From contig NC_088794.1 in NCBI RefSeq assembly GCF_011386835.1, positions 94,798,001 through 94,862,000 on the forward strand: a stretch of DNA of 64,000 nucleotides. The letters run 5' to 3'. Positions 1 through 47,556 of this stretch are shown piece after piece. This DNA is from Chrysemys picta bellii (lineage: Eukaryota). The notes under the pieces were generated by a model that did no database searches, was not told where the DNA came from, and worked only from the letters and a program-made list of their open reading frames with translations. The number at the start of each line of letters is the position of its first letter. Positions within the stretch are counted from its first letter, which is position 1. The translations under genes were made by a program, and so were the position numbers.

Positions 1-1178
1 GTTTTATTTGGGGGTGTGAATATAGACTAAGTTTTTGCTCTATTTACTCTTGAGATGCGGCCGGGGGGAGGGGGAGACATTTGAGTAAATCAAAAAAGGA
101 AGCAACCTCTATCCAAAAATAACGGTTTATATACCTGTTAAGATGGAAAGTCTTTTTATATTCTTTAATAGTGAAAGTGAACAAGTTTTGCTGGTAATGA
201 ATTAAACAATCAGTAGAAGCGGATTCACCTAGATATAATAATGCTTTTTCTTTACCTATTATGAATCTAATGGGAGGGAAATAATTTGAGTTAATCAAAA
301 CTCTGCAGAAAGGGAAGTGGCTACTAGAGTCAAGCATGGTTTACAGTGTTTTTATTGGACTTCATAGAAGAAAATAAGAAACTGAGTTTGAATCAGGGGT
401 TGCTACTTTCAAAGTTGAGTAGCTGCAGCTGCTTGAGCAGCCTGAAAATTTGAGGAGGCAGCCCTGTATCTGTAATTGTGCTTGATTCATATTTGGAAGG
501 TTTGTCACAATTATAAGGATTAGAAACTTTTTTTTAAAGGCAAGTTTGTATTCTGCGGAAGGTGATGGTACTTACTTTCTGCTCCCCATGGGGAAGTGAA
601 TTTTTCATAGGCATCTTGCACAGCTTGTAATTCTTACCTGTTACATTACGTACTGTATTTGTGTATCCCAAACCACCCTTGTGGCCGTTTTTAGCTTTTC
701 TACTCTAGTGGGGTAGGAGGGACAGGACAAAAAGGAAAACTTAATGGTTGTATAGCTAATGAGTTGATGATGTTATGGGTTCACATTCCTCAGTTTCCTC
801 TGTGCATCTCTCTTTTTTTGTTTTAATTTTTAAGTCTGTCTGAAATTATTTTCTCTTTAAAATTCACAGATGTGTTTCAGTAGCAGCGGGGTATCCTGAA
901 CTGACCTTTTAAGTTAGATTTCAGTTTTCAGATTTTAACCTCAGCTTCTGGGGTTTTCCAAACTTTTGAGTGGGTAACTCCTTTAATACAAAGACTATCT
1001 TGTGGACAACCTACCCCAGTACTTTGTCACAGAGGTTATGGGACGCCTATTATAGTGCTTGCTTATATGGAGAAGTAATACTACATTTATTGTTATGTCC
1101 TGATGGCACCAGTAAGCAGTGTTTGGACTACAGTTTGGAAACCTCTGCTCTACTGAAATCTTTTCTCTCTCTTTTCAG

Positions 1179-1301
1179 TGCTTACTATGCATTGTACTGT
1201 CATTCGTGTGGATTAATGGTGGGCTTCAGCCTCTATTCTGCCTTCGCTGCCCTGGTTCATCTGCGAGGCCTCTTTTGTCTTTTCAAGGACAATATTCTCT
1301 G
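1179..1301 (+). CDS. OIP5: OIP5 / Mis18beta internal coding exon (exon 3, 123 nt): AYYALYCHSCGLMVGFSLYSAFAALVHLRGLFCLFKDNIL
   Basis: Acceptor ctctcttttcag|TG at 1178/1179 and donor CTG|gttagt at 1301/1302. The peptide resembles the Yippee/Mis18 CxxC segment of OIP5 (human, from recall: [33 protein letters not shown]). Phase fits the next exon. Exons 1-2 were not found and probably lie upstream of the window. Confidence 0.93.
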
Positions 1302-2344
1302 GTTAGTACACACCAATATGACAGAGAATGACGAGTTAGAAATTAAGTCCAGAGTAGAGCTCTTCATGGGAAGGGAAGAATACCAATATAAGGAATAATA
1401 TTTTGATTTGTATAAAACCAGAATGGCAAATGCAGGTTGGTGATATTTTCTGCTGCCAGTGAGAACTGATAATATCAAAGCAAATCCTGAACTGCTTGTT
1501 CATAGTTTCTCTTTCTGGTAGTAAATGCAGATCAATCAAAAGCTGTGTGAATTCTAGTAATAAAAATGCTTCCTGTGGAAGTCCTTACTTTGTCCTTAAA
1601 TAGCAAAATCCTCAGCTACCAGTCTACTCTACATTTTTTTAATGTAGTGCTGAGAAGCTTATAAGAAGGCACATTAAACTTGTCTTCTACAAATATTCCA
1701 GTATCATTACAATCCTTTTGTTTAGAATGACACTGGCTAAGTTTTTTATAATGTATTGATTAATGTACATTATATTACTCTGTCTTATACCACCATTAGA
1801 ATGTAGCCACTGTTGTGCACTCTCCACCTGCAGCATCTATGTAAATTCTTAACTTGGAGAAATTATTTCGCCCTTGCTTTCTACTGCAAGGGTAATAGAA
1901 GTAGAGAGAGTGCAACTTTCCAGATTAATACATCTCAGCTAATACATATGTATTGCTTGAAGACTGTTTCTAGCTAGCTTAGTCATAAACACTAAGTTTT
2001 GTTCCTCACAATACAGAAATATATCACAATTGTGTATCACTTAACTAGAATTGAGTCAAACTTACTAATTGTTATAATAGCATGCTGGTTGTAGAGCAAA
2101 AGTGATCTTTTTAGACTGAGGGTCTATCTGTGGCAGCTATAAATTGTAGTTGGTGAAAGAGAGTAAACAATTGAGGAAAATGAAAGCTTTATTATTCTAT
2201 GTTAATATTAATTAATGATTACATTGACTATTTTTGGTCACAGGTTGGCACCTGCATTAGTTTCTGCATAAACTACCTTTTTATACAATGAATGTTTCTC
2301 TGGTTTTTATTACTATTCTCTCTTTTTTTACTTTTGTTTTTCAG

Positions 2345-2426
2345 TTATCTCTTAAAAACTAAAACCATGATAGAGGTCTCTGAGATGAACTTTCCTGCTT
2401 TGAGCCTAAAGGAACATCTGGGAAAA
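2345..2426 (+). CDS. OIP5: OIP5 coding exon 4 (82 nt): YLLKTKTMIEVSEMNFPALSLKEHLGK
   Basis: Acceptor ttttgtttttcag|TT and donor AAA|gtaaag. The YLLKTK motif is typical of OIP5, and the frame continues from exon 3. Confidence 0.93.
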
Positions 2427-3072
2427 GTAAAGTTTCTTTGTGATTTTGTGTGTGTTAAAACAGGGGTGAAATGCAAATTAAGTTTTCAGCACCACTGCAA
2501 ATACACTAAACTATTAAAACAGTCATGCTTAATAATCCCATGAACAAATGGATGTGCATGTTTTTCTGACACAGGACAGCAACTTATCTTTAAAGGGGAT
2601 TAAAGGAACACAAGCAGGTTTAATTTAACCGATAGTTCTTGTTTGTGTCAACATCCTGTTATTGAAATTCATTTTTCTTCAATTTATTCTTCACCACTGA
2701 CATTTACCTTCTGCATCAAACTTAGGATGGACAACAATTAGTCACAGTCTTATCTAATTGACTTCTATGTTCTCATATTTCAACGTTTGGGCTGTGCTAA
2801 ATGTAGAAGAATGCTGCTACTCTAAAATTTGGTTCTACTGTCTTTCAGTTTCATGGGGACTCTTCTATTTAAACCCTGTAACTGCTTTTACAGTACCTAT
2901 ATTTTAGGCCTATGTTAGTTTGAATATCCCTTTTTCTTCAACATTTATTCCTCCTAAGTTGTAAACCACTTCTGCTTTTGTTTTTGTCTGTTTTCTGGTC
3001 TGAATATGAAATTGGGCCTGATATGTTTTCTGAAGACTTCTCTCCTCCTGCAAGTCATCTTCAGGCCTTTCT

Positions 3073-3343
3073 GGGTACATCTACACAGCAACTATATACC
3101 CCTGCAGCTGGCCCGGGCCAGTCGACTTGGGTTTGGGCTGCAGGGCTGTTTCATTGCTGTGTAGACTTCCAGGCTTGGGCTGGAGTCTAAGCTCTAAGAC
3201 CATGTGAGGTGTGAGGGTCCCAGAGCTCAGGCTGCAGCCTGAGCCTGGAAGTCTACACAGCAGCAAAACAGCCTGAGCCCCATGAGCCAGAGTTGGTTGG
3301 CCCGCGCCAGACGCAGGTGTCTAGTTGCTGTGTAGATGTACCC
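3073..3343. mobile_element. PIF/Harbinger-type MITE
   Basis: Terminal inverted repeats (TIRs) GGGTACATCTACACAGCAAC / GTTGCTGTGTAGATGTACCC, flanked by a 3-bp TSD (TCT). Confidence 0.8.
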
Positions 3344-3899
3344 TCTGTGACCTGAATAGGGAGCATTCTGTTTTTCATGTTCACTAAACACTTTAAAGAG
3401 TCAATTGTTGCAGCCCTCGTTCAAGCAAAACTGCCATTGAAATCAATCAGTGTTTTGCTCAAATAATGGTAGCATTTGATCAGAAGTGCAAACGATATTT
3501 TTGAAAGGTTTGCTTACATGGGATGTTGCTAGAATGATCATAGGATTGAGCTCTTTATGGAATGTTTGCCATTCATAAAATAATGACATGTGCAGGACTC
3601 TGTTTACAGTGGTAACCTGATGGTAACTCAGGTTCTCCTTCAAATAATTGTCCACACAGATTTCGTTGGGGGTGTTCACTTGTGTGAGATCAGACACTGC
3701 TTTTGAAAAGAATCCTTTGACTGCACCTATATCCTGGATGTCTTATTGCCCTCTGTAGTTGGGGACATAAAGGGTGGAGAAGCCTCAACCATCACTCAGT
3801 TCCTTCTTATCACCTGTGGCTGCAAGTCAGAACCCCTTTAGTGTCCGCATCCTATGCGGCTTTAGCTTTAGCATTTCAGTAGTTACTACTTATTCTGTA

Positions 3900-4061
3900 T
3901 CAGAGGGGTAGCCGTGTTAGTCTGAATCTGTAAAAAGCAACAGGGGGTCCTGTGGCACCTTTGAGACTAACAGAAGTATTGGGAGCATAAGCTTTTGTGG
4001 GTAAGAACCTCACTTCTTCAGATGCAAGTAATGGAAATCCACAGGACCCTCTGTTGCTTTT
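3900..4061 (-). mobile_element. Penelope-like element terminal fragment with a hammerhead-like motif, nested in DIRS
   Basis: GGGGTAGCCGTGTTAGTCTG...GCATAAGCTTT..CACTTCTTCAGATGC resembles reptile Penelope ends. Flanked by the 13-bp direct repeat TACTTATTCTGTA (3887-3899, 4062-4074). Confidence 0.75.
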
Positions 4062-7045
4062 TACTTATTCTGTAGGTTACTTTTACCCACTGGGTTTATT
4101 TTAAAAATATACCCCCATGCAATACCTTAAAATGCCTGACATCAAATCACCAGGGTTCAAAACGTGTCCCTCTTGTGATGCAGCAATGCCCATTATTAAT
4201 GGATATTCTAGGTGTCTAATTTGCTTAGCAGGGGATACATCTCGGAGTGCTGCTCTGTATTCCACTCCTTTTCTAAATGTGCTTCAGCAGGCGAGGGAGG
4301 CAAGGCTTAAGCTCTTCCTCCTGGAAAAGCTGATGTAAGCCTCACTGGATCAGCAGACCCCTGGCATAACTTCACCAATTAGGTCAGTCACAGGTCTCCA
4401 GAGGCCCAGTGAGCCAAGACACCACTCTGAGCTCCTGGGCCACCTTCTAAGTTCTGTTTGTCCACCACATTCACATCTACTTCCAAAAAGAGGCTTCAAG
4501 GAGAGCCGCTCCTGGGATCAGGGCAGGTACCACTCCCTTTCCAAGCAGGAGACAGAGATCCTTTCCTAAGACTACTTCTATTAAGAGCTTGAAATCAGAG
4601 TCCTGCTTCAGTACCTCCATATTGAAATCGGACTGATGGTTCCTTTTCAGCATAAGGGCCTGTCAGCACCAAGTGCCCTACATGCGGTACTGGCCTCTTC
4701 AGTGCTGGGCCTAAAACAAGGTCTCTTGGTGCTGTGGAGTCACCTCTTATTGAGAGACTTGAAAAGGTGATCACCAAATCCTCAACTTCTCACCCAAAGG
4801 TTCACTCCTTTTTGTCTTACTCAATGTAATACACCAGGCCTCCTCCCCTGAGCATCCCCTTCCACCCCTTGTGAGTAGCACAGTGGGAATTGGGCTGGGA
4901 GTCTAGGGATTAATTTCTGAAGGGTGTCAGGAAGTCATTGGGGAGGGAGCACTCCATTGGTATCCACCCACGTGCCATCCGTCCCACTGCTCTTACCAGG
5001 TCTGGCCATACTTGTCCCCTTCAGCTGGGAAACCATATTCTAGGAAGTCAGAATCCTTCGCAGTCTACAATGCCAGAGCTCTATCACCAAAGAAACAACT
5101 CCAACCTGCACAAGTACCTGTCCTAGCCACAATTCATGAAAGTTGAGGAAGAATATAATGGAGACAACCACGCTCCTGAACAATCACCTTATGCCGTATC
5201 CTTGTGCTCCTCCAGATGAAGCAGTTAATTCTCTATCTGTTGCCTCATTGGATGAGCTAAAAGTCTTCCAAGACCTGATGAGATGAATGGTGGAGATGCT
5301 GGATACCATGATATCCTGCAAACTTCATCTTCAAGGAGATGGGTTAAAATAAGTGCTGGACTGCTTGAAACAGCCAAGATAATTTGGCATACACATGCCT
5401 CAGTTCCACTTACCTCCAAGAAAACTGATAGGAGGGTACCAGTTATCAGCCATGGGATTTGATTATCAGCATCCTACTTTAGGCAATCTGATGGTATAGG
5501 CATTTCAAGTAAATCTAAACATCAAGGCCAGCTGAAATCTACCCCTCAAGAGACGGACCCCAAAAAACTAGATCTCTGGCAGAAAAGTCTACTTGTTGAG
5601 CTTCCAGATGAGAATAGCAAATTACCAGATGCTACTCAAAATATGATTCTTTGATTTGGGATCAGCTTTCCAACTTTCTCAATAAATTCTTGAAGGAGAC
5701 CCAAGAGAATTCAAAATCTCTAATGGCAGAAGGTCCGCTTATAGGCAGCCTGGTACTTTAAACAGCACTAGATATATCTGATATGGCAGCAAGAACCATG
5801 CCCACTGCTGTTACAATAAGAAGGTCCTCTTGGCTGCAAGCAGCTGGGATCCTGAGGGAAGTCCAAGTTACCACTAAGGACCTCCCATTTGAGGGAAACT
5901 AGCTATTTAACAGTGGCACAGATGAGCACTTCCCACCCAGAAAGACTTGAGAGTGATCCTGCAATCCTGGGGACTGGAACATACAGCCTGAAAGAGAGCA
6001 ACGGAAGCATCAGCTGTTCTATGGTCATTTGTCTATCACAATATTATTCTCAGATTTTCAGTGCCCCAAGAAAGAGGCAGAGACTTCACCTGAGGCAAAC
6101 CGCTGCCTCTTCTTCAGCTGCCTCACAGTCTAGGGCATCAGACAGGAATCAAATTGGCAACACTGTCAAGGGGTTGTCTAGACCACCTTCAGATCCTTCT
6201 TTTTTCACCCCTGCCTGGCAGCTGCCTTCCAAGAAGCCTGGGTTAGAATAACCTCAGACTGATTGGCCCTTAAGATAATCATCAATGGATATCACTTCCA
6301 ATTTTAAACTGCTCCTATGCCCTCCTAATCCTCCTAGTCTCTCTTCGGGAACCCCTTCCCATGCGGGAGTCTACCTCCTGCTTCAACAAGTCTCTCATAT
6401 GACTGGGAGCAGTGGAGGAAATGCCCCCAGATTTCTGTGGTAAGAGCTTTTATTCCCATTGAGGTTAGGAAGTAAAGAAGAGGATGGGTCTCTATTTCCC
6501 TGTCTTTGATGTTTTAATGCTTTCATCCATCATTTCATGTTCCACATGCTTGCCCTAGATTCTATAATACCCTCTTTGGATCCAATGGTCTGTAGTTTTC
6601 AACTTCAGGATGCCTATTTTCACACTTAGATTTATTCAACTCACAGAAAGTAGCTGAGATTCATAGGACCATCTCATTAACAATACAGGGTCCTACCCTT
6701 TGGCCTCTCCACCGCCCCATTAGTCTTCAAAGTTCTTACTATGGTGGCAGCTCATCTGAGAAGGCAAACAATCCAGGTATACCTCTACTTAAACTGGCTC
6801 ATTTGAGGGAAATCCCCATAGCAAGTGATCAGCTCTGTTCATGTGTCTTTTAAATCTTCATCTCGCTGGGCCTCAAGGTCAGAGACCAATCCACACTAGC
6901 ACCAACTCAAAGGATAGAGTTGATCATGGAAGTGATTAGATTTCACACTTGTAGGCGCATACCTCCCTCAGCAGAGATTCCAAACTATGACAGATATCAG
7001 ACAGCTCCAAGCACTCCCCAAGACATGAGTGAGGACCTGTCTACT

Positions 7046-7222
7046 TTGTATACTGTGTTGTAATTGAAATCAATATATTTGAAAATGTAGAAAAACATCC
7101 AAAAATATTTAATACATTTCAGTTGGTATTCTATTGTTTAACAGTGTGATTAAAACTGATTAATCACAATTAATTTTTTTGAGTTAATCGCATTAGTTAA
7201 CTGTGATTAATTGACAGCCCTA
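7046..7222 (-). mobile_element. hAT-type non-autonomous transposon end fragment
   Basis: Ends in gattaattgacagcccta (reverse complement TAGGGCTGTCAATTAATC) with repeated gattaat/ttaatc subterminal motifs. Confidence 0.55.
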
Positions 7223-7513
7223 TTATTTACCTTACAGTAACACAGGAGATTCCATGCCTTGCCTGTTGTTATAGGATTCTTATTAGTGAAGGGTGGTTGA
7301 GGCTGCTCTCCCATTTATGCCCTCTGCTGTAGGGGCGAGAGGGCACTCAGGGTGTAGGCACAGCTACAAAAAACACTGCTGTTGAAAATAATTTGATCTT
7401 TGGCACAGGCGCACCAACAGTGGAATCTGGACAACACATCTCAAAGAACCACAGTTACTGTAGGGTATATAACTGTTCTTTACCTACCCTTAATTTTTTT
7501 TTTTTCCTTCTAG

Positions 7514-7672
7514 CTGAAAGAACAACTTGTGGGGGTCCATGTGCGCCTAGAGGTACTGATTAAGAGGCTGGAAGAACTGAACCAACAGATCAACATGGCT
7601 GACAAGCAGGGCTATGCATCAAGGACAGTTGGCCTAAAGCTAGGGTTTGCAGGAATCAAGTCAAGCAATTAA
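7514..7672 (+). CDS. OIP5: OIP5 last coding exon: LKEQLVGVHVRLEVLIKRLEELNQQINMADKQGYASRTVGLKLGFAGIKSSN*
   Basis: Long poly-T tract then tccttctag|CTG; phase 0 joins exon 4; TAA at 7670-7672. LKE...H.RL resembles the OIP5 C-terminal helix. Confidence 0.88.
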   Translation: MKEQLVGVHVRLEVLIKRLEELNQQINMADKQGYASRTVGLKLGFAGIKSSN

Positions 7673-10212: not shown

Positions 10213-10217
10213 TCTTA

Positions 10218-14830: not shown

Positions 14831-16576
14831 TCATCTTTTAAATGAGTGCCACAGCTGAGAAAAGAGGTGGATATGAGAAGGGGATTCCCATGCAGACTGA
14901 CATCCTTGCACCTAGGTGTCTCAAACTGGGTACCCAAAAACACCTTCGAGGAGTTTTTGGTTTAGTGACTTGCCTAGCATCACAGGAATAGGACAGAACC
15001 CAATTCTCCAGAGCAGCATTCAACTGCCTTAACCATAAGACCATCCCCTCTCTTTCTACCTTCCACTGCCTTTTTCAGTGTATGCTTTCCAACTTCTGCA
15101 ACAAATGAGGCTGGGTCCTATCGGCAATAGCCTCTTTCACTACACAACTCTGATTCATTGCCAAAGGATGTCTATCCTGTGCACTGACAGGAGGAAGGGG
15201 TTCCTGTGGAAAAAACAGAATGTGATCATGTAATTAAAGACTCTCCCAATGCATGCACACAAGGGGAATGAACTGACATTGCACAGGAAACCTTAATTCT
15301 GGCATTTCCTAACTTGAGTATTTGACTCTGCAAGGTTAATGTAGTTTGTGTATGTAGGTTCCTAGGTTTTTAAAAATCAAAATTCCATCATGTGGCATAT
15401 CAACACCCACACAGGTTAGCAGCAGTGTTGGAACCTTTACATCTACCACACCAACCTCTGCCAGTTCAGCTAACACAGTAACTGATTAGCAATAGTAGGG
15501 TCTCCTCCTTTCTGTGGACCAGTGCTAGATGGGGACTGGACACTCAGCCAGTGGGTTTCCCAGATATTAGCTGACAGCTGAGGAAAGCAATCTTGGGTTC
15601 CATTCCTGACTCTGGAGGAGACTGTTCTCTAATGGTCACAGACTCCTTTCCATCCCTTCTGTGTCTCAGTTCCATCTCTTCCCTGCTCCTAATCCCACTC
15701 CCATTTTCCTTACTTAGCCATTCCCAGTGTGCCCATCACCTCCAATCATTGTCCCAGTCTCCTTGTCCAAACAGTCCCACTTCTCCCACGTATACATGCT
15801 CGTTCCTTATCTGATCTCATTCCCCAGCTCCACTGATCTTCAGTTCCATTCTCCCTCACCACTCCAACTCCCAGTTTCAATTTCCCTCTCCCCCTTCAGT
15901 CCCAGTTTCTGTCCCCCTCTCCTGAGCTACCTGTCCTAATGACAGCTTTTGTTCCCTCTGCATTCAAATCAGGCAACTTCCTCCTATGCGTGGGGGTGGG
16001 GGTGCGTGGTGCGAGTACAGAATTACCCAATGCAGTCCAGAGCTACAATTGCATAGATAGTCCTGCCAACACTGTGCTGGAGCATGCCCAATGTGGACCA
16101 AATAGTCAGGGGATGTAGCTGCTAAAATCTATTGAAACTGAGCAAACTGTAATTTTTCAAAATGACTTAACTTGAACAAATTTGGGCAGATTTTCATAGG
16201 AAAGGCAAATGGCACATCCCTGACATAAAGGCCACCTGCCAAATTGTGTGCTAGAGATTTTCAAAGAAAAAGTCATCAGAAATGTTTTAAATGTGTGCAA
16301 AACAATGTACATTTCCCTAGCTGTGTTCTTGTAAATGGCTGAATCATTTGGGCTGAAGTTTTTCAAACTAATTCAGCCTGAGGCACATTAAAGTTTTGGC
16401 AGAGTTGTTTAGAACTCTGAAAACAAGGTCTTATAATGAGAAGGGTCAGGTAACCTTATTAGGCAGAACTACCCGTTCCACCTGAAACAACATGGCTACC
16501 TTCTAGCTTGTCTTTTTTTTCCCCCCCTAACAAATGACACACAATGAGGTTTCAGTGCATTCTCAGCCCGTGCTGC

Positions 16577-16582
16577 TTTATT
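16577..16582 (-). terminator. Candidate Cyrano poly(A) signal (GCAAUAAA)
   Basis: The minus strand reads GCAATAAA, about 20 nt, CA, then GT-rich ttgtgtgtcatttgtt. Alternative TTTATT hexamers occur at higher coordinates (e.g. about 19.19 and 21.55 kb). Confidence 0.55.
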
Positions 16583-17107
16583 GCTAAAAAAATTGTATAC
16601 AGGTGCAGAGTTTCCAAGTTCATTTTTAAACAGTTCCTCTTTACAGTGTCAAAAGAATAAAGTCTTTTCTTCAAATCCCCAAAGATGCATAGATATAAAA
16701 GCAAGCTGCCTTTTGGAAAACTTCAGCTATATACAGGGAGAAATTTTCAGTATAACCACATAAAACACACTATCCAATGGAGTAAATAGGTTCCAGTGTT
16801 GCCACTAAATTCCTTCTCTAATCTTTCCTGTGCATGGTCTATTGAATACAATAAAAATGTGATCATGCTATTAGACGTTCAGTATTCTCTAACCTAGTTT
16901 CCAAACTTAAGGACTAAACTTTTTTTTTTTTTAAAGGCATCTACTCTATCCCCTTCCTATGTTGGAGCTGAAGACCACCTTCAACATTTCTCCTCTGCTC
17001 TTCCACCATGCTCCTCAAAGAGATTATTTACAAGGAAGTTTTATTTCCTTTTTGTTTAGAAGGGAAATAAGTGTGTGTTTGTAAATACACTAACTGCTTA
17101 CCGCTCA

Positions 17108-17393
17108 GGCAATGTCTACACTACAAATACTACAGTGACAGAAAAAACTCTTCCATTGTTGTAATGTACACTACAGTTGTGCCACTGTAGTGTACATTAC
17201 AACAATGGAAGAGTTTTTTCTGTCACTGTAGTAACTCCACCAACTTGAATTCTTAACCTCGCTACTGTCACTCTTCTGTCTACCTAGCCATAGGGGGTTT
17301 ATGTCAGCATAGGTGCAACATTCAGGGGTGTAGATTTTTCACACCCTGAGTGTCGTTACTATGTTGACCTGAATTTTAAGTGCAGACCAGTCC
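17108..17393. mobile_element. Harbinger-type MITE containing a perfect 50-bp palindrome
   Basis: Ends GGCAATGTCTACACT / AGTGCAGACCAGTCC; flanks TCA/TTA. Confidence 0.7.
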
Positions 17394-20300
17394 TTATTTG
17401 TGGTGGTGGTGGTGGGGGGGGGGGGGGGAAGGGAGATACTAATGCAGGATTTTAAACTGAAGAGTAGTCCTGAAGGATGTCCAGTAGGGTTAAACATGTT
17501 TTAACTATTCCTTTTTGCCTACAGAAGTTGGCCCAGAGGAAAAATTTCAACCATATTCTGATACTATAAAATACAGTCATCACAGATTAAACCTTAATAT
17601 TCCCTTTTGCATTTGGCAACTACTGTATATCTAAAGAAAGAACAATGAGAAAAAAACATATGGCCCCCACACCAAGCCTGCAGTGTGGGTGTGCTTGTAT
17701 TACACTGGCTAAGAATGTAGACAGGTGTTAACTTGACCCATAAACCCTTCCTCTTGCCCCATTTTGTTTCTTCAAAGAAACAGGAGGGAATTTCTGACAG
17801 AGGGATTTTCACATAAACTAGGTCCTCCTGCAAAGTTAGATGTAGCCATAATAAGATAGAAGTAAGGAATCTCGCAAACTACTTGTCTCAGTCTGAGAGC
17901 TTCTATGAGTTTACATGCTTCAGTCTAGGAAAAGCAGCATTAGTTCTTGTGCTCTGCTACAGATACCATAACTTTTTTTTTTGTACATTCTCAGCAGAAA
18001 TTTTCCCCAAACACCCACAAAATGGCTCAAGAAATATTCTTTACAGAAAACATAGTAAAAATTTGCAAACAAATAGATGGCACCTGATTTCCATTAGTTC
18101 TCTCATGTCACTCTTTTTAATCAGTGAAATTAAGAACAAAACATATTGTCACCTATGTTGCTAGAGGTCAGGACACCCATTGAGCAAATCTCATTTTGTA
18201 ACTTTTTAAAAAATTTTAGTCTCAGAGCTCAACAAAATAAACACACAAGTTTGTCAAAAATTTCAGGTTCATTCTTACAGGGTGCCATTACTGCTGGTTC
18301 ATACCAGTATGCTTCAGTACAGCAGCCTATGAGGCTAAAGAGTTACCTGAAAATACTATTAAAAAGCTATTCAACACCTGAAATATGTGGACTGTGCTTA
18401 TTGATTTCAACCCCCTCCAAAGAATTTACCTCCCTAGGTCAAGACCTCTTTCACCTATTGTCAGGCAAATCCTACACTCAGTTTACTATGAGTCAGTTTT
18501 TATGTTATCCAACTTGGATTTCACCTGTTGCCCTCCCCACACCCTGGGAAACTCTGCACCTTTCTGTTTGCTACAATTGCAGCAGCTGAGAAACCTCATC
18601 TCGCCACTAAACATGCTTAGTTCATGCCCTGTTTTTTACATGCTCAGGGCACTAATGTGAACCAGGCAAGAGGTTAAAAAGGCGAGTTCTGATCCTCGTT
18701 CCTGATATGCAGTTTTGGTGCCATGCTTCTGTCCCTATCTGTATAATCTGCCCCTTTCTCTACAGAGGCAGTGCATTCTCTAAAAACAACATTTGAGAAT
18801 CAAAGCAGTAAGTTCAAGCTATTGGTATATTAGTTCCTATTGCTTCATTATGAATAAATGCATATCTGAATTTACTGGTAATAACTATGTAACACTAGAC
18901 ATTTTGAATCATGCATAATTAGAATACTAGCTCTATAAGACTTGATTTGTGGGCCTGTGCCACTCTTCCTCATTTTGTCCATGCAGTTCTTTGTGCCTAG
19001 GGCTTCACAAATGAACATTCTCTTAGTTGCCCTGCAAACACACATTCAGTTTGAGAGAAAACAGAATTTACACAGGACATATGCTACAGCAAGTTAGAAC
19101 ATCTGACAGTAAAGATAAAAGGTAAGCCTTAGAGAATTTGGGTATACTGTGACTGCTTGGTACTTAGGTTTAGTGCCAGACATATCCTTTATTTATGCTG
19201 TGTATGTATACACATTATTCTGAAGTCAAACTTCAGGAAAAAGTGCAAAGCAGACTGAAGGAAAACGTATGTGTGTGGGGGTGTCCATAGGTAGCATTCT
19301 GCACTATGTGAGACACCCAGGTACCACTGTTGGCCCTTCGTGCCTTAGCCTGGCCATACTGTGGAGGCAACATGCTGAACCTTTGGGAGGAAAGGCTACA
19401 CCTTGAACTGCCCAACATATAGCCCTCTGGCTCAAGTAAAAAGCTGTACGAATGGACTTGGGAGGAAATCTCAGCTAGACTCCATTCACAGCTGAAAGGA
19501 TGGTCACTGCAATGCAGGGGAAAAAGGGGTCTCTAAGAGCACTGACAAACTTCCCCAGAAAAGGTTCTGTTCTCCCATTATTACGGAGAGGTAATTCCAT
19601 AAAACCCTGAAAATAACCTTGACAGCAGAGCTGGTAGTGAAGTCCTGTTTAAAATATCGTTGTCCTGAAACTTGCCACAGCTCTCTATTCCCAAAAACTT
19701 GCCACATGGATTTCTTAGTGCTGTGAAGGTCCTTAACAGCCAGCTGTATCAAGCAGGAGCTGCAATTCACAGCATAGGTACTGGCTAGAACTTCTCCAGC
19801 AGCACCAATGAGCAAGAAAGCAGACCACAGGTTCCTGCACAGTCCACACTTCTGATCTAGACTTAGCACTGCTTAGACCTAGTATTAGCATGGCACTACT
19901 TGACAACCACCACATTATCTGAACTTTCTGCTTTGTTTTGCAAGCAAGGAAATCAAGGGCTTGGGGGGGGGGGGGGGGGGAGAGGAGAAAAACCATACCA
20001 CAGCTCAGTGGCCTTAGGGCAGCAGGATCTCTGACATTGCTGCTATGAGCAGTCTTTGGAAATTTAGTCACCCCTGGAGAATAGTACACCAGAAAGTCTG
20101 CACTGGCAGCAACAAGCCGATAGCCTTCAAGTTTTCATTGTAACTGTGTAACACAGTCTTGCAAAACTCTACTCAGCTAGGAAAGTACATATTCTGGAAA
20201 TATGAGCAAGATAGTGTTTTCATTATTATGGTAAAAGACTGGCAATTAGACTTTCGTAATTGTATAAGGCTGGTCTAATACCATCTAGTATGTCTAGGAC

Positions 20301-22135
20301 ATGATCAAGTTAAGGTCTTCTCTGGGTATGTTTCCTCTTTTAATAATAATTTAATGGCTGGAATTTATTTCAAATCACCATCTTTTAGATCACAGGTTTT
20401 CATGTCCAAGACTACTATTGGATATGCCCTACTTGCCAACATTTAACGACTTATCCATACATCCATCTTGGTTACATTATATTAGTGGTGCCCACATTTT
20501 GCCTCAACAGAGGGTCATGTTATCAACTTGCCAGGGGACAAATGGCCCCACCGAGTTTACTAAATAATGAAGCAAAGTTCAGCCACTCTCAGACACTACA
20601 GATGGTAGCATGCAATATCCCATCCTGATCAAAGATATTAAGCCACCACATGGATCAATACACACTTTGGTTTAATAATTCAATTCAGGACAGAACATGG
20701 CATGCTGAGCTGTATATTCTCTGCAGGCTACACTTCTGTACTGAAGACAAGGTCAGCTGTGGGTTATATTTTAAAACTCCATGGGCTCTTTTGAGTGCCC
20801 CTCCAATAGTTGCCAGGGACAAATACCGCAGCAGCAGATCAATTCTCCTCTGCCTTACCAGAGAATCTACTGCAATTGGCTTTGCAAAACTCAAAGGGTG
20901 AACAGAAAACAGTTTTAATCTTAAATGGAAGCATATGGCCAGTTTGTACTTAAAATTTTAAAAGAGGAAGTAGGATAGTCTTTTGAAATAAATAAATCCT
21001 GCAATTCTGTCCCTGCAGAAGAAACATTTGGGTTGTCAACATTTTGCAATACTTTCTTTTCAGGACCTGTCACAGCTCTACTTAGTTTCTTTTTACAAAA
21101 AACAAAAACTCCGCTCTCCAATAAAAGTTTGAATAAAAGCTTTCCAACTGTGGGAAATGGGTCTTCTTCATATCTCAGCACTTTCCTCTCAGAGGCACTG
21201 CACATGCTACACTACAAAACAAACAACAGGGAAAACAGTCACTCATACACAACTGCCCAGTCTTCCCCTATATGCACCAATTCTGACGCATGACCTATAG
21301 TTACCCAGGTTTTATACCAGGCTCATCACCATGGTATTCAAGCGCCATATTCCCTCAAAAGAGGGGAACAGTAAAAGGAATTCTTCCATCTTCTTAAAAA
21401 GAGAGACACTGTTCTCTTCATGCAACTCCCTGCAGCACAGACCACAAACTTATTTGGTTATTACCACTTATTCTACTGTACAATCTTGGTAATGCAAGTT
21501 AGTTACTATTACATGCAAAACAGTTATTGCTACTAAAATTCTAGTTTTATTAAATCTTTTTATGGCTTTGTTTGCATCAGGGATATTTCCCCCTACATAC
21601 TGTGCTATTTTGCATTCCAGTTTCAGAGGTATTTTTTATCAATTGATTCCCCCAAGCACTAAACTACTTGATTCAATGGTATAGCTACTTTTGTTCAGAA
21701 CTGAACTAGCTTTGAGCACAGTTCCCCAGAGCTCTACTGTAAACAGCCCACCTGCCCAATATACATGGAGAGACGGAATATGCAGAGACTCTGTTTTTTA
21801 TTACATAATTAACTCTGCAAGAATCACTGGTTTTGTATCTCAATACATTTTGCCCATTTAATTAATCTAGATCAACTCAGAAACCCAAACTACCCATTTT
21901 TCCCAGGTGGCCATTTACAAGCAGGTCTCAAGAAAAGATGCAGTATCCTCTCTTAGCTGACAGCAGCCTGTTATTTTTAAAACAGAGGTGGATGAAAAAC
22001 AATAGTGACAGAAATTAAAAAGCTATTCCAGGAAATCAGATAGATATGATACACAGATTGTTGCAAACCTGGGTTGGGAGTCATTTCCATCTCTTGCTTC
22101 AGTAGCCTAAACTGCCTGTTTGAGAAAGTGATAAA

Positions 22136-22667
22136 TAAAGTTAAGATTTTGTCACAGTTATTTTTAGTAAAAGTCAGGGACAGGTCATGGGCAATAAAAA
22201 AAATTCAGGGAAGCCCATGATCTGTCTCTGACTTTTACTGAAATAATGGGGATGGGGGAACTGACCAGGAGACGACTGAAGCCCAAGCCCTGCAGTTGGA
22301 GGAGGGGGGAGCTCCAGCACCCACTGCGGTTGACAGCTTCAAGGCCCCTGCAGCTGCTGATGGCTCCAGTGCCAGTGACTGAGAGCTCTGGGGCCCCCAC
22401 TGTCCACAGCGGCTGACAGCTACAGGTCCCCTCTGCTCTCAATGGCTCAGAGCTCCAAGGCCAGTGGCTCAGAGATACGGGACCCCCACTGCCTGCAGTG
22501 GCTGACGGCAGTGGGGCCCCTGCACCCGCAGCGGCTCAGAGCCCCCGCCAGCTGACAGCTCTGGCCCCACCACCCCAGGCACAGGGCTGAAGCTGAAGGG
22601 AAAATGTCACAGAGGTCTCTGAAAGTCACAGAATCTATGACTTCCACGACAAAAAATCTTATCCTTA
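22136..22667. mobile_element. hAT MITE (532 bp) with GC-rich internal repeats, inside the predicted Cyrano last exon
   Basis: TIRs TAAAGTTAAGATTTT / AAAATCTTATCCTTA; perfect 8-bp TSD GTGATAAA (22128-22135, 22668-22675). Confidence 0.82.
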
Positions 22668-23553
22668 GTGATAAACCATTTGGATTTCACCTAGCTCAGC
22701 TTTAGTAGAGGGAGAGGCGTTGTAGAGAGAGAGAGAGAGAGAGAAAATTGCCACGCAGTTAAAAAAAGAAATCAGATAGCTGGGAAAAGTATTGGAAGGG
22801 TCAATCTATAATTTAGGATTCTAAGTGTACAAAACTGACAAAAAACGTATAGACCTCAATTTGAATGTAATGATTTAACTAGTCTTACTAATTAAGATTA
22901 ACATTAGTATCATATTTTTTAAACAGAGTTATTTCTGCAAAATGTTACTCTGCTCAATAGTTAACAGAGCTCATTAATTATACCCATATGAGAAGGCAGC
23001 AGAGTTGCCTATAAAACACGTACAGTGGCTCTTCAGCTTCTGTATGATGGAACGGATGGGTAGTAATGAAGCGGTCTACATAAAGATAGAATCTGCAAGA
23101 ACAGTTTAGGGTGTTTCATTAAGACTAAAAGGAAACAAATGCCACTGTCAATTTGGTGTGTGTCCTGGATTTGTCTTGCAGTTCACCTTATATGGACGAA
23201 GAGAGGATTAGTCTGGATGCTCACAGTCTACTGTTTAGCCTAGATGGACTTTACCAAAAACAATACAAAAAAGTCAGCTATTATTCCACAAAGCCCATCA
23301 ATTTAATAAATTCTGGTTCCAAAGATAACCTTGTCACTACGACTGCCTAAGAAGGATACTGCATCTTTAGACCACGTTCATAACATCTGTTACTGTCTGC
23401 TTTCTACTGTTAAGTTACATTGTTTATTATTGTCATTAATAATTTGCCACTCTGAAATTGTAAAAATACTACTAGGCTCATGCACTGATCCTAACATGGC
23501 ACTACAGTTTGCTACAAAGCACTAATGCTTATGGAACTATACACATCTCAAAA

Positions 23554-23579
23554 TGGAAGACATTGGTGATTTTGTTGTT
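23554..23579 (-). promoter_or_regulatory. Extended miR-7-5p binding site (Cyrano TDMD trigger)
   Basis: + strand TGGAAGAC-ATTG-GTGATTTTGTTGTT versus miR-7-5p UGGAAGAC-UA-GUGAUUUUGUUGUU. The minus-strand RNA therefore has an 8mer seed site, a 4x2 internal loop and 14 contiguous pairs to miRNA nt 11-24. Confidence 0.96.
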
Positions 23580-23643
23580 TTCAAACAACTTGTAACATCA
23601 TTTTGTCCACAAGTATTAAAATATATATATGTATATATATATC

Positions 23644-23651
23644 TATTGCAC
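23644..23651 (-). promoter_or_regulatory. miR-25/32/92/363/367 family 8mer site (GUGCAAUA)
   Basis: TATTGCAC on +, 64 nt 5' of the miR-7 site in transcript orientation. Confidence 0.65.
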
Positions 23652-37899: not shown

Positions 37900-38960
37900 G
37901 GGATGAGATGGTGAGGAGGGGGCACGCAGACACCCATCCCAATCAGGGGAACACCGTACACACAAACACACACACGGCGCGGGAGGGGACTGGAGACAAC
38001 GAAGACGTACGTGCCCAGGCCCAGCGCGCTCAGGGATTAAAGGTGGGGGGCAGGTACTTAACCTGAGCGAGTACCAGCCGGAATTCGAACACGGCCAGGC
38101 CCAGCCCAATCAGGGTGCAGGAAGGGGAGGCGGGTACACACACACATACGTACCCGGGCCCAGCCCAAGCAGGGAGCGGTGAGGTCCCGCCACTAGCCAG
38201 GCTCAGTCTCGCTCCTCAAGCAGTCGTTCCCCGCTCCGTTTACCTGCCCCTGGCCGAGGCCGCCGGGCCGCGGCCGGCCCTCTCCCCTCAGCCTCCTCCT
38301 CTCACTCCGCCATCTTCCCCCGCTCACCTCGACCACCCGGCTGGGGGCTCAGGCGCCCGCCGCCTCCAGCCCCACCCACTCGAGAGCTAACCTATCGGGC
38401 ACCGCGTCGTCATCCTTCCGCCTTCGACGAGCATTGGTCAGTGGACGCATCCGTCAGAGGTACTTGGCGCCCGCCTGCAAAACTCTCTCCTCTGATTGGT
38501 CAGAAGAGGAACACCCTTTGGCGAAAGTATTGGTTACCCCGTGGGATAAGACCTCCCCTCTCACTCATTCTCTCACCCCTCCCCCGCACCTATATTTAAA
38601 GGGGCCGTTTCGAATTAAACGTGTGTTCCTGTGACTGCGATTCCAGCTGGCTGGCGCGTGGGAAAGGCACCGGGGGCGGGGCGGGGCGGGGCGGCACCGC
38701 TACTGGGGAGCGAGGTCATAGGACCGGAGCCCAGCCCTTACCGGAGGCGTCGAAGGTTATGGCGCCCCCCTCACCCAAGGCTGTTTTACCGCGAAAGCCC
38801 CACGCTGCCTAGAGCACGTGGAGCCAGCCCCGGGGGACCTGAGCTGTTCGCCCGCATGGGATTTGAACGTGTAGTACCACTAGCAGCGCCTGCCCCACCT
38901 TATCAGCTGGGACAGACATCCCGGAGCCGTCCTGGCAGCTAGGCCCGTATTCCCCTCAGT
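37900..38960 (-). promoter_or_regulatory. CpG island, putative Cyrano promoter
   Basis: The only long CpG-rich segment outside TEs. YY1-type motif AAGATGGCGG on - (38307-38316); three CCAAT boxes on - (38433, 38495, 38529); a (GGGGC)4 Sp1 array at 38672-38694. No protein-coding exon starts here. Confidence 0.85.
38244..38340 (-). ncRNA. OIP5-AS1: Candidate Cyrano exon 1 (TSS approximate)
   Basis: Contains GAAGATGGCGGAGT, matching my recollection of the 5' end of human OIP5-AS1. Donor GGCAG|gtaaac at 38244/38243; other donors at about 38062 and 38328. Confidence 0.55.
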
Positions 38961-39299
38961 GATAATACGAGGGAGGGGTAAAATTATGCGCACTTGTGCC
39001 CCATTCCCTCCTTTTATAAAAAAAAAAAAAGCTAAAGCTAAATCCTAGATTGGCTCTCTGCTAGTTTTTCCACAGGAACGCCCCTGGGTTGTTTTAGACC
39101 TTTACCCACTGTCTAAAATACAGTTGTCCTGATTACTCTAGACAAAAAGTGTTAATTTTTTTAAGTATATCAAAAGTAGGAAGCCTGCCAAACAATCAGT
39201 AGGGCTACTGGACAATCAAGGCACTAAATAAGTACTCAAGGAAGATAATGAAATTGTGGGAAAGTTAAATTAATTATTTCCCTTGGTCTTCACTGCAGA

Positions 39300-44657: not shown

Positions 44658-44711
44658 TCAGTGAAGAAATCGAATGCTCATTTTCTGCTCTACATCCACC
44701 TTCTCCAAAAC
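44658..44711 (-). CDS. CHP1: CHP1 last coding exon: VLEKVDVEQKMSIRFLH*
   Basis: Acceptor ttattgcag|GTT; TGA at 44660-44658; matches the CHP1 C-terminus. Confidence 0.96.
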   Translation of the reverse strand, partial: VLEKVDVEQKMSIRFLH

Positions 44712-45035
44712 CTGCAATAAAACCCAGAGACAGCTGGTTAAGTCACTTATGTACACAGTTCTGTTCCAGTTAAAATGTTGAATGATATTAAAAAGCAAGC
44801 AAGAGGAGTATGGGGCAGCCTGGCAAGCCATTCATTCATCTGGAGGCTGCTAATGCTGTGCCCCAGAAGCTAAGCTTTCCTTTTAAAAATTAAGAAAACC
44901 ACAATGAGAATTAAGTGTAACTCATCTAGCAATATCAATCTCCAGACAGCCAGAAACCGCTAAGAGAAGTGTGGACTATCCTCATTTGTTAGAGGTTGTT
45001 AACCTTTAACTCACGTGACAAGTATGAACACTGCA

Positions 45036-45395
45036 CAGTAGAACCTCCGAGTTATGAACACCAGTTACACAAACTGACTGGTCAATCACACTCCTCATTT
45101 GGAACCAGAAGTACGCATCAGGCAGCAGCAAAAACAGGCAAATATAGTACAGTACTGTGTTAAACTACTAAAAAAATGAAGTTTAAAAAAGATTTGACAA
45201 GGAAAGGAAATGGTTTCTGTGCTTGTTTCATTTAAATTAAGATGTCTGAAAGCATTTTTCTTCTGCATAGTCAAGTTTCAAAGTTGTATTAAGTCAATGT
45301 TCAGTTGTAAACTTCTGAAAGAATAAACATAACATTTTGTTCAGAGTTATGAACATCCTCCATTCCTGGAGGTGTAAGTAACTGAGGTTCTACCG
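45036..45395. mobile_element. Tigger-like MITE
   Basis: TIRs CAGTAGAACCTC / GAGGTTCTACCG followed by TA. Confidence 0.72.
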
Positions 45396-46077
45396 TATTT
45401 CACTACTGGACAAGGCATAAGGACTGGTCTACATCAGGAATTTGACTGGCACAGATAGTGTAGAAGAATAATTACTCTGCTTTAGTTATGCTAGTATAAT
45501 TCCCCTGTGTGACTATTTAAGAATATGGAGTAATTATTCTGCTATAACTGTGCCAGTCAATTTCACCATGTAGGCAAACCTCAAGGAATGAAGTGGATTA
45601 TCCTTTTCTGATCTAGTGTGATTAGAGTCTCACTCTGGGATCTCAAGTGGACCTTGGAAGACCACCACTGTTTTTTCCCTAGTTTGACTCCTGGCAAAGG
45701 CTATTTAACTCTCTCCCACAAGGAAGTTACCCTTGTGGTGGGCCTCTTGCCTGCAAATCTACTTGACTGAAAATTCAAAACAGATCCAGCTACATAACCT
45801 CAGAAGAAAAAGCTGGCAGAAGAAGAGGTATATAGGCTGATTATGAGTGATTATACACTGACAGCACAGCCCCAGAAGTGAACCCTGCCCTTCAAGAGGC
45901 TATGATCTCATTCTCTCTGCTAGGGCACAGGGGAATCATGATATACTGGGAAGGGCTGCTATAATAAATGCAAAAGTGAAGAGTAGTATCTTTTTGGCTC
46001 ATTTCCAACTGTTTATGTGACTGCTCAGTGATGACCACGTTCAATCACTTCTGTTATTCAAAAGGTTAATTCCCGAC

Positions 46078-46200
46078 CTTGACAAACTCTGTGAAGGAGA
46101 TGGCACTATCTCCATCCTGATCGGCCTCCTGGATTGTCCTGTCAGCAATACTGCCCAGCTGCTCGTCTGAAATGTTTACACCAACCATCATCCGCAATAC
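46078..46200 (-). CDS. CHP1: CHP1 exon 6 (123 nt): [41 protein letters not shown]
   Basis: cag|GTA acceptor and AAG|gtcggg donor; EF-hand [13 protein letters not shown]. Confidence 0.97.
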
Positions 46201-47556
46201 CTGCAAGATACAAAAACCCCAGGAAGTCTGAATATCCCCTTTAATAACCTTTAAGTTAAGAGTGTTATGGGAAGATGATTCTGAAAGTCTCGTGCAGAGT
46301 TTATTCACAGTACTCGGAACTAGGATACCATCCAAGTACCAACCCTGTATAGGCAGAACTCAGGAAGACCCTTGTTAACTGTCTGGAAATGTTTTCTATG
46401 ATCAAGATTTTCAGTTCCTTTTGTACACCAAACCTATTGGCCAAAACTGCCTCCACACAAATACAAGATATACTAGGGTGCCTTTGTGCACCCCCTGAAC
46501 ACAAGTGCTAGCTTCTTCCTCATTCCCAAAAAAGTGGAATTCAAAATGGCTCCTACAAAGTGAGTGAACAGGATTCTCGGAAGTTTCAACTATTTTTCAC
46601 AAGATTGACAACTGCTTGATTTGACCTTTCACTGTTTAGGATTGTTTGGTTGCTTTCTGAAGCCTTGCAAGTTGCAAACAGGCAATCAAAACTGGACTAG
46701 TCAGCTCTTCTCCTTCCTGCCAGTTTGTAAGGTGCTTTTCTGTGCTGCAGACAGAAGTGAGCACTTTTGATCAAATGCAGTTCCTTGCTCAAGGTGAGCC
46801 ACAAATTACTATGTCTACTTGGCAGGATTAGTAGAATGCAGTTACTCCCAACTCAAATCTAGCCTGATATGCACATCCATGCCATTACAGTAATGATTTC
46901 TTGTTGCTTTTCTCCATCGAGGAGGAAGGCAACAAAAGCTTTATCCCCATGGGAAAGAACTGGTCAGATACTAATCCACCTCAAAAAACAGACTCTTATC
47001 TAGTCTTTTTGTCCCTGCCATAAAAACTAAGTATGGTGTTTTTTTGTAGTGGCAGGTTACATCTGCTGATGTCTTTGTTCCAATGGAAGTATAGTCATCC
47101 ATAAATAATCAAACATGTTAAAAGTTAACTTAATACTCTGTTGAAATTTCTGATGGAGTAGGAAGTCTATGCTCTTAACGGAAATTGAAAGACAAAAGTC
47201 ACCACATATTTGAAGCTATAGGTAGGCAGAGTCCAGTCAGCCATACATTTTAGAATGGTCTGTAAGACTGGTCTAACCACGGTCACTTGCAGATGCATTA
47301 ACTATTGGATCAAAGGCTGCCATTCGACATTTTCCATATTCTGAAGCTGTTTTAGGTGAATGGCACTTTTTTTTGGGAAAGGTCACCCAAGTACCAATAA
47401 AATCTTTCACAAGTTATCAATGCAATGAGCATGTCAACTTCATTCTTTTACAAAAAGCATTCATAGGGAAAATTTAAGGGTTAAAGTTGCAAGCTAGATC
47501 GTCTAAAGACCAACAGACTCATTTTAAGTCCCATGTTAGCCCATAGTGCTCTTTAC

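What the first reader, a model, noticed from the sequence alone, without database searches (positions are those of the whole stretch)
23554..23579. Intact miR-7 degradation-trigger site: the lncRNA Cyrano hidden between OIP5 and CHP1
Seen: the + strand reads TGGAAGAC-ATTG-GTGATTTTGTTGTT, which is miR-7-5p with its central UA replaced by ATTG. The - strand RNA therefore offers an 8mer seed match, a 4x2 central loop that should prevent slicing, and 14 uninterrupted pairs to the miRNA 3' end. Established: this architecture in Cyrano/OIP5-AS1 triggers ZSWIM8-dependent target-directed miRNA degradation of miR-7, within the Cyrano-miR-7-Cdr1as-miR-671 network of mammalian brain. Inference: the TDMD circuit is intact in this reptile. 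No ORF-based annotation would show it. The system is known in mammals and fish; the novelty would be its presence and structure in this lineage.
Basis: partly seen in the sequence, partly recalled or inferred. Interest (0 to 1): 0.9.

Follow-up and report, generated by a model that had tools for sequence, protein, structure and literature searches.

The report
Turtle Cyrano lncRNA miR-7 site
This is the turtle copy of Cyrano (OIP5-AS1), a long noncoding RNA whose near-perfect miR-7 binding site marks that microRNA for destruction; the site is real, transcribed and identical to the human one, but Cyrano is already known to be conserved across vertebrates, so finding it here is expected.

Summary
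Window 23554-23579 (+) reads TGGAAGAC-ATTG-GTGATTTTGTTGTT. The minus-strand RNA therefore offers miR-7 an 8-nt seed match, a 4x2 internal loop and 14 pairs to the miRNA 3' end.

- Transcription: contigs from four RNA-like runs cover the site. They are spliced with GT..AG introns on the minus strand, which gives a three-exon, ~10.2 kb noncoding transcript.
- Motifs: every published Cyrano motif is present in the published order and spacing.
- Neighbours: Mis18-beta/OIP5 lies convergent on + and CHP1 lies upstream on -, as in human.
- Comparison with human: the 26-nt site, including the CAAU loop, is identical to the human CYRANO trigger used for the 2026 cryo-EM structure.
- Partners in the same genome: four mir-7 loci (three encode the exact complementary miRNA) and a ZSWIM8 exon.
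- Uniqueness: across the 2.37 Gb genome the extended-pairing pattern occurs only here and antisense to the mir-7 genes.

Function as a ZSWIM8-dependent trigger of miR-7 decay is inferred, not tested.

Novelty is low. The literature describes Cyrano and this site as conserved throughout vertebrates, and turtles sit between the sampled lineages.

The parts
23554..23579 (-). miR-7 degradation-trigger site: RNA 5'-AACAACAAAAUCAC-CAAU-GUCUUCCA-3'
   Evidence: Identical 26/26 to the human CYRANO trigger. Covered by RNA contigs with no variant in 4 runs.
23644..23652 (-). UGUGCAAUA, miR-25/92 seed match, 64 nt upstream of the miR-7 site
   Evidence: This is LncLOOM element 2, described as about 60 nt upstream of the miR-7 site (PMC7798263).
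23537..23543 (-). UGUAUAG, Pumilio-recognition-like element just downstream of the site
   Evidence: LncLOOM element 6. It lies in the 34-nt 3' flank that matches human 31/34.
23478..23484 (-). UGCAUGA, Rbfox motif 52 nt downstream of the Pumilio element
   Evidence: PMC7798263 places WGCAUGA about 55 nt downstream of the Pumilio element.
16557..26488 (-). Terminal exon 3 (about 9.9 kb) holding the site. The 5' boundary is fixed by spliced contigs; the 3' end is inferred from the polyadenylation signal.
   Evidence: contigs are continuous over 22501-26487, the junction is at 26487/26488, and one X2 contig runs about 3.6 kb further left; acceptor ...TTTTCAG; poly(A) signal followed by a GU-rich stretch.
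16577..16584 (-). GCAAUAAA, polyadenylation signal and miR-137 match
   Evidence: LncLOOM's conserved poly(A)-signal element.
16686..16692 (-). CUAUGCA, miR-153 seed match about 100 nt upstream of the poly(A) signal
   Evidence: The spacing is as published.
28200..28297 (-). Exon 2 (98 nt)
   Evidence: a joint skipping 1711 nt with ends CT..AC on + (GT..AG on minus) in all 4 runs; donor GTAAGT, acceptor CAG.
38154..38317 (-). Exon 1. The 3' boundary comes from contigs; the 5' end is approximate. It begins near AAGAUGGCGG, the YY1-like AUGGCG motif with a 3-codon ORF (M-A-E-stop).
   Evidence: The loose end at 28298 maps to 38155-38184. One search gives the sequence and donor GTACGT. Contigs reach only 119 nt into the exon, so the transcription start site is not fixed.
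38000..39000 (.). CpG island, the presumed Cyrano promoter
   Evidence: GC 0.60-0.69, CpG observed/expected 0.7-0.9. Both fall to 0.37 and 0.12 at 39000.
1174..7669 (+). Context: the last three coding exons of Mis18-beta/OIP5 (1174-1302, 2355-2432, 7514-7669), convergent with Cyrano
   Evidence: Pfam Yippee-Mis18, 33 bits, above the cut-off; best hits are turtle proteins named Mis18-beta; tblastn exon map.
44658..51350 (-). Context: CHP1 coding exons upstream of Cyrano on the same strand. Residues 135-179 lie at 46075-46209, the last coding exon at about 44658-44711, and others near 47.6, 48.9 and 51.3 kb.
   Evidence: 44 of 45 residues identical to PDB CHP1 chains 2ct9/2e30; peptide motifs. 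Only the 46 kb exon was named by a database search.

Best explanation
This is the turtle orthologue of the lncRNA Cyrano (OIP5-AS1). It is a three-exon, roughly 10.2 kb noncoding transcript from the minus strand. It starts at a CpG island about 6 kb downstream of the CHP1 stop codon and ends convergent with OIP5.

About 3.2 kb into the RNA lies the conserved core with the miR-7 site. The inferred mechanism comes from mammalian work:
1. AGO-loaded miR-7 pairs through its seed (nt 1-8) and its 3' half (nt 11-24).
2. The 4-nt CAAU loop bends the duplex and blocks slicing, and the miRNA 3' end leaves the PAZ pocket.
3. The ZSWIM8-CUL3 ligase recognises this conformation, helped by the flanking trigger RNA, and ubiquitylates AGO.
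4. AGO is degraded and the released miR-7 is destroyed.

Shown here: the sequence architecture, transcription, splicing and strand, synteny, identity to the human trigger, and the presence of mir-7 genes and a ZSWIM8 exon. Inferred: that miR-7 is actually degraded in turtle cells.
For: Sequence and pairing:
- The site is exact and far beyond chance.
- It is 26/26 identical to the human CYRANO trigger, including the wild-type 4-nt loop. The 3' flank matches 31/34, and the 5' flank matches apart from a 4-nt insertion.
- Changing the loop length cuts ZSWIM8 binding and AGO2 polyubiquitylation in vitro (PMC13083262).

Transcription and gene model:
- RNA contigs of 4 runs from 4 studies cover the site and carry a minus-strand GT..AG intron plus a junction to exon 1.
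- Small runs X10 and X12 hold 0.87-0.88 of the words in 21-26 kb but 0.05 in 26-36 kb, while large DNA-like runs hold about 0.9 of both.
- All LncLOOM motifs occur in order and at the published spacing.
- The longest ORF is 94 aa, no better than shuffles.

Synteny: OIP5 and CHP1 flank the gene.

Partners in the genome:
- Three mir-7 loci encode the exact complement and a fourth encodes a U10 variant.
- A ZSWIM8 exon is 56/60 identical to PDB 9rwz_N.
Against: No functional data: no small-RNA data, no miR-7 levels, no tailing or trimming, and no tissue information.

The runs are only guessed to be RNA by the index; splicing is what shows it. Contigs cannot give strand directly (it is inferred from splice dinucleotides), expression level, the start site or the poly(A) site, so the 3' end rests on motifs alone. 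Some deeper runs hold up to 0.70 of the 26-36 kb 'intron' region, so unspliced or alternative isoforms exist.

The 127 nt around the site fold no better than shuffles (z +0.49). The published cloverleaf is therefore not supported by energy here, and covariation could not be tested.

Only one exon of ZSWIM8 was checked.
Confidence: 0.9

Rival explanations
1. The RNA is Cyrano, but in this lineage the site acts mainly as a high-affinity miR-7 sponge or binding platform, or serves another role of the conserved core such as Pumilio, Rbfox or hnRNP G binding. It does not trigger miR-7 decay.
For: No decay was measured here. The core also carries conserved protein-binding motifs. The site is predicted to be partly base-paired within the RNA (PMC7430676).
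Against: The pairing geometry, including the loop length that matters for ZSWIM8 recognition, is identical to the human trigger. ZSWIM8 and miR-7 are both present. Perfect conservation of all 26 nt is hard to explain by sponging, which needs only a seed match.
Confidence: 0.06
2. The plus-strand sequence is a decayed mir-7 paralogue (a miRNA pseudogene), and the minus-strand complementarity is incidental.
For: The plus strand is miR-7-5p apart from a 2-to-4 nt substitution.
Against: Rfam finds no mir-7 hairpin in the window, while it scores four elsewhere in the genome at 66-89 bits. The transcript is on the minus strand. The flanks match human CYRANO, not a mir-7 precursor. The gene is syntenic with Cyrano.
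Confidence: 0.01
3. A chance match in AT-rich intergenic DNA.
For: None beyond the low-complexity look of the T-rich half.
Against: 0 of 100 shuffles gave a match. The site is unique in 2.37 Gb apart from the mir-7 genes. The surrounding motifs and the synteny also fit Cyrano.
Confidence: 0.001

Closest known systems
Human/mouse CYRANO (OIP5-AS1, 1700020I14Rik) miR-7 TDMD trigger (Kleaveland et al. 2018, cited from my own knowledge; structure and biochemistry in PMC13083262)
   Same: - The 26-nt site is identical, including the CAAU loop.
- 31 of 34 nt of the 3' flank match.
- The same miR-25/92, Pumilio, Rbfox, miR-153 and poly(A)-signal motifs occur in the same order.
- The site lies about 3 kb into the transcript, in the large last exon.
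- The gene lies between CHP1 and OIP5 in the same orientations.
   Different: [quoted passage not shown]
- The modelled transcript of about 10.2 kb is at the top of the published range (2,340 nt in medaka to 10,155 nt in opossum, PMC7798263).
- Function is untested in turtle.
- The Cdr1as/miR-671 partners were not examined.
Zebrafish cyrano (Ulitsky et al. 2011, cited from my own knowledge and through PMC7798263 and PMC7430676)
   Same: The same conserved core with the miR-7 site, in a lncRNA that is otherwise poorly alignable.
   Different: Between fish and human only a 67-nt element is found by BLAST. The turtle core is much closer to human over at least about 170 nt, judged by eye.
Other TDMD triggers: libra/Nrep with miR-29b, HSUR1 with miR-27a, and Plagl1/Lrrc58 with miR-322/503
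   Same: The same pairing logic: seed match, central loop and extensive 3' pairing, read by ZSWIM8.
   Different: Different miRNAs and unrelated host transcripts. They are analogues, not relatives of this locus.

Membership tests
Cyrano / OIP5-AS1 lncRNA | [quoted passage not shown] | tested here: met
   26/26 identical to the human trigger sequence in PMC13083262 Supplementary Table 1.
Cyrano / OIP5-AS1 lncRNA | Position between CHP1 (same strand, upstream) and OIP5 (convergent) | tested here: met
   CHP1 exon on the minus strand at 46075-46209. Mis18-beta/OIP5 exons on the plus strand at 1174-7669. That this is the human gene order rests on my own knowledge.
Cyrano / OIP5-AS1 lncRNA | Transcribed and spliced RNA on the strand that presents the site, with the site in the large terminal exon | tested here: met
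   contigs of 4 runs cover the site. Junctions have GT..AG on the minus strand. The exon/intron contrast is seen.
Cyrano / OIP5-AS1 lncRNA | Ordered series of deeply conserved short motifs (AUGGCG at the 5' end, UGUGCAAUA, the two miR-7 halves, UGUAUAG, WGCAUGA, CUAUGCA, GCAAUAAA) | tested here: met
   All are present in order. Spacings of 64, 52 and about 100 nt compare with the published ~60, ~55 and ~100 nt.
Cyrano / OIP5-AS1 lncRNA | No protein-coding capacity | tested here: met
   the longest ATG ORF in the 10.2 kb model is 94 aa, and 28% of shuffles do as well. Only the 3-codon ORF at AUGGCG is conserved in position.
Cyrano / OIP5-AS1 lncRNA | Polyadenylated 3' end at the conserved GCAAUAAA | tested here: inconclusive
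Cyrano / OIP5-AS1 lncRNA | Cloverleaf secondary structure around the site (PMC7430676) | tested here: inconclusive
   the minimum-free-energy fold pairs parts of the site, as published, but z is +0.49 against shuffles. No multi-species alignment was available for covariation.
ZSWIM8-dependent TDMD trigger (functional class) | Lowers the level of the cognate miRNA, dependent on 3' pairing and on ZSWIM8 | not testable with these tools
   Only the parts were shown: mir-7 loci, a ZSWIM8 exon and the expressed trigger.

The most novel reading that the evidence does not exclude
The turtle site may treat the genome's miR-7 paralogues differently. The fourth mir-7 locus encodes a U10 variant, as in mouse miR-7b (the mouse sequence is from my own knowledge). 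RNAduplex pairs this variant across the CAAU loop, leaving only unpaired target bases instead of a 4x2 loop. Cyrano could therefore spare that isoform, or be sliced by it, which would make the locus an isoform-selective regulator rather than a uniform miR-7 sink.
Probability: 0.08. Interest if true: 0.35.

Novelty: already known. Interest (0 to 1): 0.15.

Why it matters
It adds little new biology. It does confirm in a turtle, with transcript evidence, that the Cyrano trigger is invariant to the nucleotide, together with its loop and its companion motifs, over the more than 300 million years (my own estimate) separating turtles and mammals. That fits the structural finding that loop length and pairing geometry are what ZSWIM8 reads.

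On the practical side, the report gives a usable gene model (three exons, promoter, likely poly(A) site) for a lncRNA that ORF-based annotation would miss. It also shows that the site can be recognised from raw sequence.

Tried and rejected
- Rfam scan of the whole window at gathering thresholds: no match. No model for Cyrano scored, and there is no mir-7 hairpin here.
- Thermodynamic support for the cloverleaf: none (z +0.49).
- AUGGCG at 41639-41644 as the Cyrano 5' motif: rejected. It lies in a GC-rich, partly tandem repeat, and the spliced contigs point to exon 1 at 38.15-38.3 kb.
- Finding ZSWIM8 through the Pfam SWIM family in the genome: the six hits did not include it. It was found with a 44-aa piece of the human protein taken from the paper's supplement.
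- Naming the Mis18 exon through the PDB: no hit. It was named through the large protein database instead.
- Rfam on the high-depth intronic element: no match.
- Literature search for an explicit report of Cyrano in a reptile: none in the held library.
- Earlier scan notes: nothing relevant.
- A full alignment to the human 137-nt fragment was not run, to avoid pasting a long sequence. The comparison was made with the paper's own flank units and by eye.

Full report
**1. The observation**

Window 23554-23579 on the + strand reads TGGAAGAC ATTG GTGATTTTGTTGTT. A search for the 22 specified bases with a free 4-nt centre, allowing 3 mismatches, finds only this place, and none of 100 dinucleotide shuffles gives a match.

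The genome that the window comes from (G000, 2.37 Gb) has four mir-7 loci above the Rfam gathering score.
- Three encode TGGAAGACTAGTGATTTTGTTGTT.
- The fourth encodes a variant with T at position 10.

So the + strand here is the organism's own miR-7-5p with UA replaced by ATTG.

RNAduplex of the minus-strand RNA with that miRNA gives 14 pairs, a 4x2 internal loop and 8 pairs, at -29.5 kcal/mol. A perfect complement gives -36.7 and the seed alone about -10.4.

Genome-wide, the pattern ACAACAAAATCAC-N(0-8)-GTCTTCC occurs five times: here, and antisense to the four mir-7 loci. The 321-nt core is single copy.

**2. Is it transcribed, and from which strand?**

The run index lists fourteen small runs (35-213 million letters of contigs, five studies) that hold 0.86-1.00 of the sampled words of 21000-26000. 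Large runs of about 2,000 million letters hold about 0.9.

For 26001-36000 the large runs still hold about 0.9. Small runs X10 and X12 drop from 0.87-0.88 to 0.05, although some deeper small runs hold up to 0.70.

Contigs of X1, X3, X10 and X2 (four studies, two organism labels) were laid on 22501-28500.
- Coverage is continuous over 22501-26487, with no difference at the site.
- The same joint appears in all four runs: it skips 1711 nt, with ends CT..AC on the + strand, which is GT..AG on the minus strand.
- A 100-nt block follows at 28199-28298.
- The loose end beyond it maps uniquely to 38155-38184.

Reading the junctions on the minus strand gives canonical sites: donor GTACGT after exon 1, acceptor ...GTGCCAG before exon 2, donor GTAAGTAT after exon 2, and acceptor ...GTTTTCAG before exon 3.

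These runs therefore contain spliced RNA made from the minus strand, and the site lies in the last, large exon.

**3. Gene model**

- Exon 1 ends at 38154. It lies in a CpG island (38000-39000: GC 0.60-0.69, CpG observed/expected 0.7-0.9).
- Exon 1 contains AAGATGGCGG (38308-38317). This is the YY1-like AUGGCG motif that LncLOOM reports at the Cyrano 5' end. Here it opens a 3-codon ORF.
- The contigs reach 119 nt into exon 1, so the start site is only approximate.
- Exon 2 is 28297-28200 (98 nt).
- Exon 3 starts at 26488. One X2 contig runs about 3.6 kb to the left of 22501.
- At 16686-16692 and 16577-16584 lie CUAUGCA (miR-153 seed) and GCAAUAAA (poly(A) signal and miR-137 match). They are about 100 nt apart, as published for the Cyrano 3' end, and a GU-rich stretch follows.

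With a 3' end near 16557 the transcript is about 10.2 kb and the site sits at about nt 3172. The longest ATG ORF is 94 aa, matched by 28% of shuffles.

**4. The conserved core**

Three other LncLOOM elements lie around the site on the minus strand.

| Element | Position | Spacing here | Published spacing |
|---|---|---|---|
| UGUGCAAUA (miR-25/92 seed) | 23644-23652 | 64 nt upstream of the site | ~60 nt |
| UGUAUAG (Pumilio-like) | 23537-23543 | just downstream of the site | not given in the passages read |
| UGCAUGA (Rbfox) | 23478-23484 | 52 nt further downstream | ~55 nt |

The human CYRANO trigger RNAs are listed in Supplementary Table 1 of PMC13083262.
- Their miR-7 site, AACAACAAAAUCAC-caau-GUCUUCCA, is identical to the turtle sequence at all 26 positions.
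- The human 34-nt 3' flank matches with 3 mismatches.
- The human 25-nt 5' flank matches apart from a 4-nt insertion and two changes next to the site.

That paper reports three things that bear on this site.
- The wild-type loop length is 4, and changing it substantially reduces ZSWIM8 binding and AGO2 polyubiquitylation.
- About 25 nt of flank on each side help binding without sequence specificity.
- The loop contains an A:U pair in the cryo-EM structure.

**5. Neighbours**

- A Pfam Yippee-Mis18 match (33 bits, over the cut-off) lies on the + strand at 1174-1302, with another exon 1.4 kb before the window.
- The large protein database names this gene's closest relatives as turtle Mis18-beta (Chelonia mydas, Pelodiscus sinensis) and as Mis18-domain proteins of Chrysemys, Chelonoidis and Gopherus.
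- tblastn places the last three coding exons at about 1.2, 2.4 and 7.5-7.67 kb.
- On the minus strand, 46075-46209 encodes 45 residues, 44 of them identical to residues 135-179 of CHP1 (PDB 2ct9, 2e30).
- Further CHP1-like exons lie at 47.6, 48.9 and 51.3 kb, and the last coding exon ends near 44658.

The order is therefore OIP5 on +, then Cyrano and CHP1 both on the minus strand. To my knowledge this is the human arrangement read in reverse. The organism is a turtle, judging by the protein hits.

**6. The rest of the pathway**

A 44-aa piece of human ZSWIM8, taken from the paper's supplement, finds one locus at 90% identity and three paralogues at 51-55%. The open frame at the best locus matches PDB 9rwz chain N, 'Zinc finger SWIM domain-containing protein 8', at 56 of 60 residues.

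Only this exon was checked. Cdr1as and miR-671 were not examined.

**7. Interpretation**

The locus meets every testable defining feature of Cyrano/OIP5-AS1. The mechanism (seed plus 3' pairing with a 4-nt loop, the 3' end released from PAZ, recognition by ZSWIM8-CUL3, AGO ubiquitylation, then miRNA loss) is taken from mammalian work and is an inference for the turtle. It is a strong inference because the RNA determinants are identical and the protein and miRNA partners are present.

The rivals fare poorly.
- A sponge-only role does not explain invariance of all 26 nt and of the loop.
- A decayed mir-7 gene is contradicted by strand, flanks, Rfam and synteny.
- Chance is excluded.

**8. What did not work or stays open**

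- The 127 nt around the site fold no better than shuffles, and covariation could not be tested for lack of other species' sequences.
- The start site and the poly(A) site are not fixed by reads.
- Tissue and expression level are unknown.
- Some runs cover much of 26-36 kb, so unspliced or alternative forms exist.

**9. Novelty**

Cyrano is described as conserved throughout vertebrates: 18 curated species including chicken, Xenopus, fishes and elephant shark (PMC7798263). It is also described as present from human to lamprey, with the 26-nt core complementary to miR-7 in all species with sequence (PMC7430676).

No paper in the held library names a reptile explicitly. A turtle is bracketed by the sampled lineages, so its presence here is expected.

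Noticed in passing
window 26700-26893: A MITE-like element in Cyrano intron 2: 194 bp with 24-nt terminal inverted repeats that are 92% complementary. Summed RNA-contig depth there is 7,158-17,985, against 76-86 on the exon, so it belongs to a very abundant repeat family. No Rfam match.
   Followed up: partly
L004 (G000:C20:20643740-20643830): The fourth mir-7 locus encodes a U10 variant (TGGAAGACTTGTGATTTTGTTGTT). From my own knowledge this matches mouse miR-7b. RNAduplex pairs it across the CAAU loop of the Cyrano site at -29.6 kcal/mol, leaving only unpaired target bases.
   Followed up: partly
window 41000-41700: A GC-rich (0.66), strongly C-skewed stretch between the CHP1 3' end and the Cyrano promoter. 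It is partly tandem with a period of 30. It looks like a repeat rather than a second promoter, and it carries a chance AUGGCG.
   Followed up: partly
window 23612-23651: An (AU)n microsatellite between the miR-25/92 site and the miR-7 site. It is present in human CYRANO too, with a different length. The reads tool flags it as a skipped repeat.
   Followed up: no
window 22501-26487: The contig of run X10 differs from the window by 11 substitutions and 3 indels in this 4 kb of exon (nearest to the site: A>G at 23516, indels at 23413 and 23418). None falls within 23520-23652, the core with the miR-25/92, miR-7 and Pumilio elements. The variants are too few for a test.
   Followed up: no
window 45655-45662, 48735-48742, 56285-56292 (minus strand): Three further miR-7 8mer seed matches on the minus strand within the CHP1 gene span. 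By the exon map, the first two lie in introns. Probably chance.
   Followed up: no
window 38308-38319 (minus strand): The conserved 5' AUGGCG opens only a 3-codon ORF here (M-A-E-stop). If the motif matters, it is more likely as a YY1 or initiator element than for a peptide.
   Followed up: no
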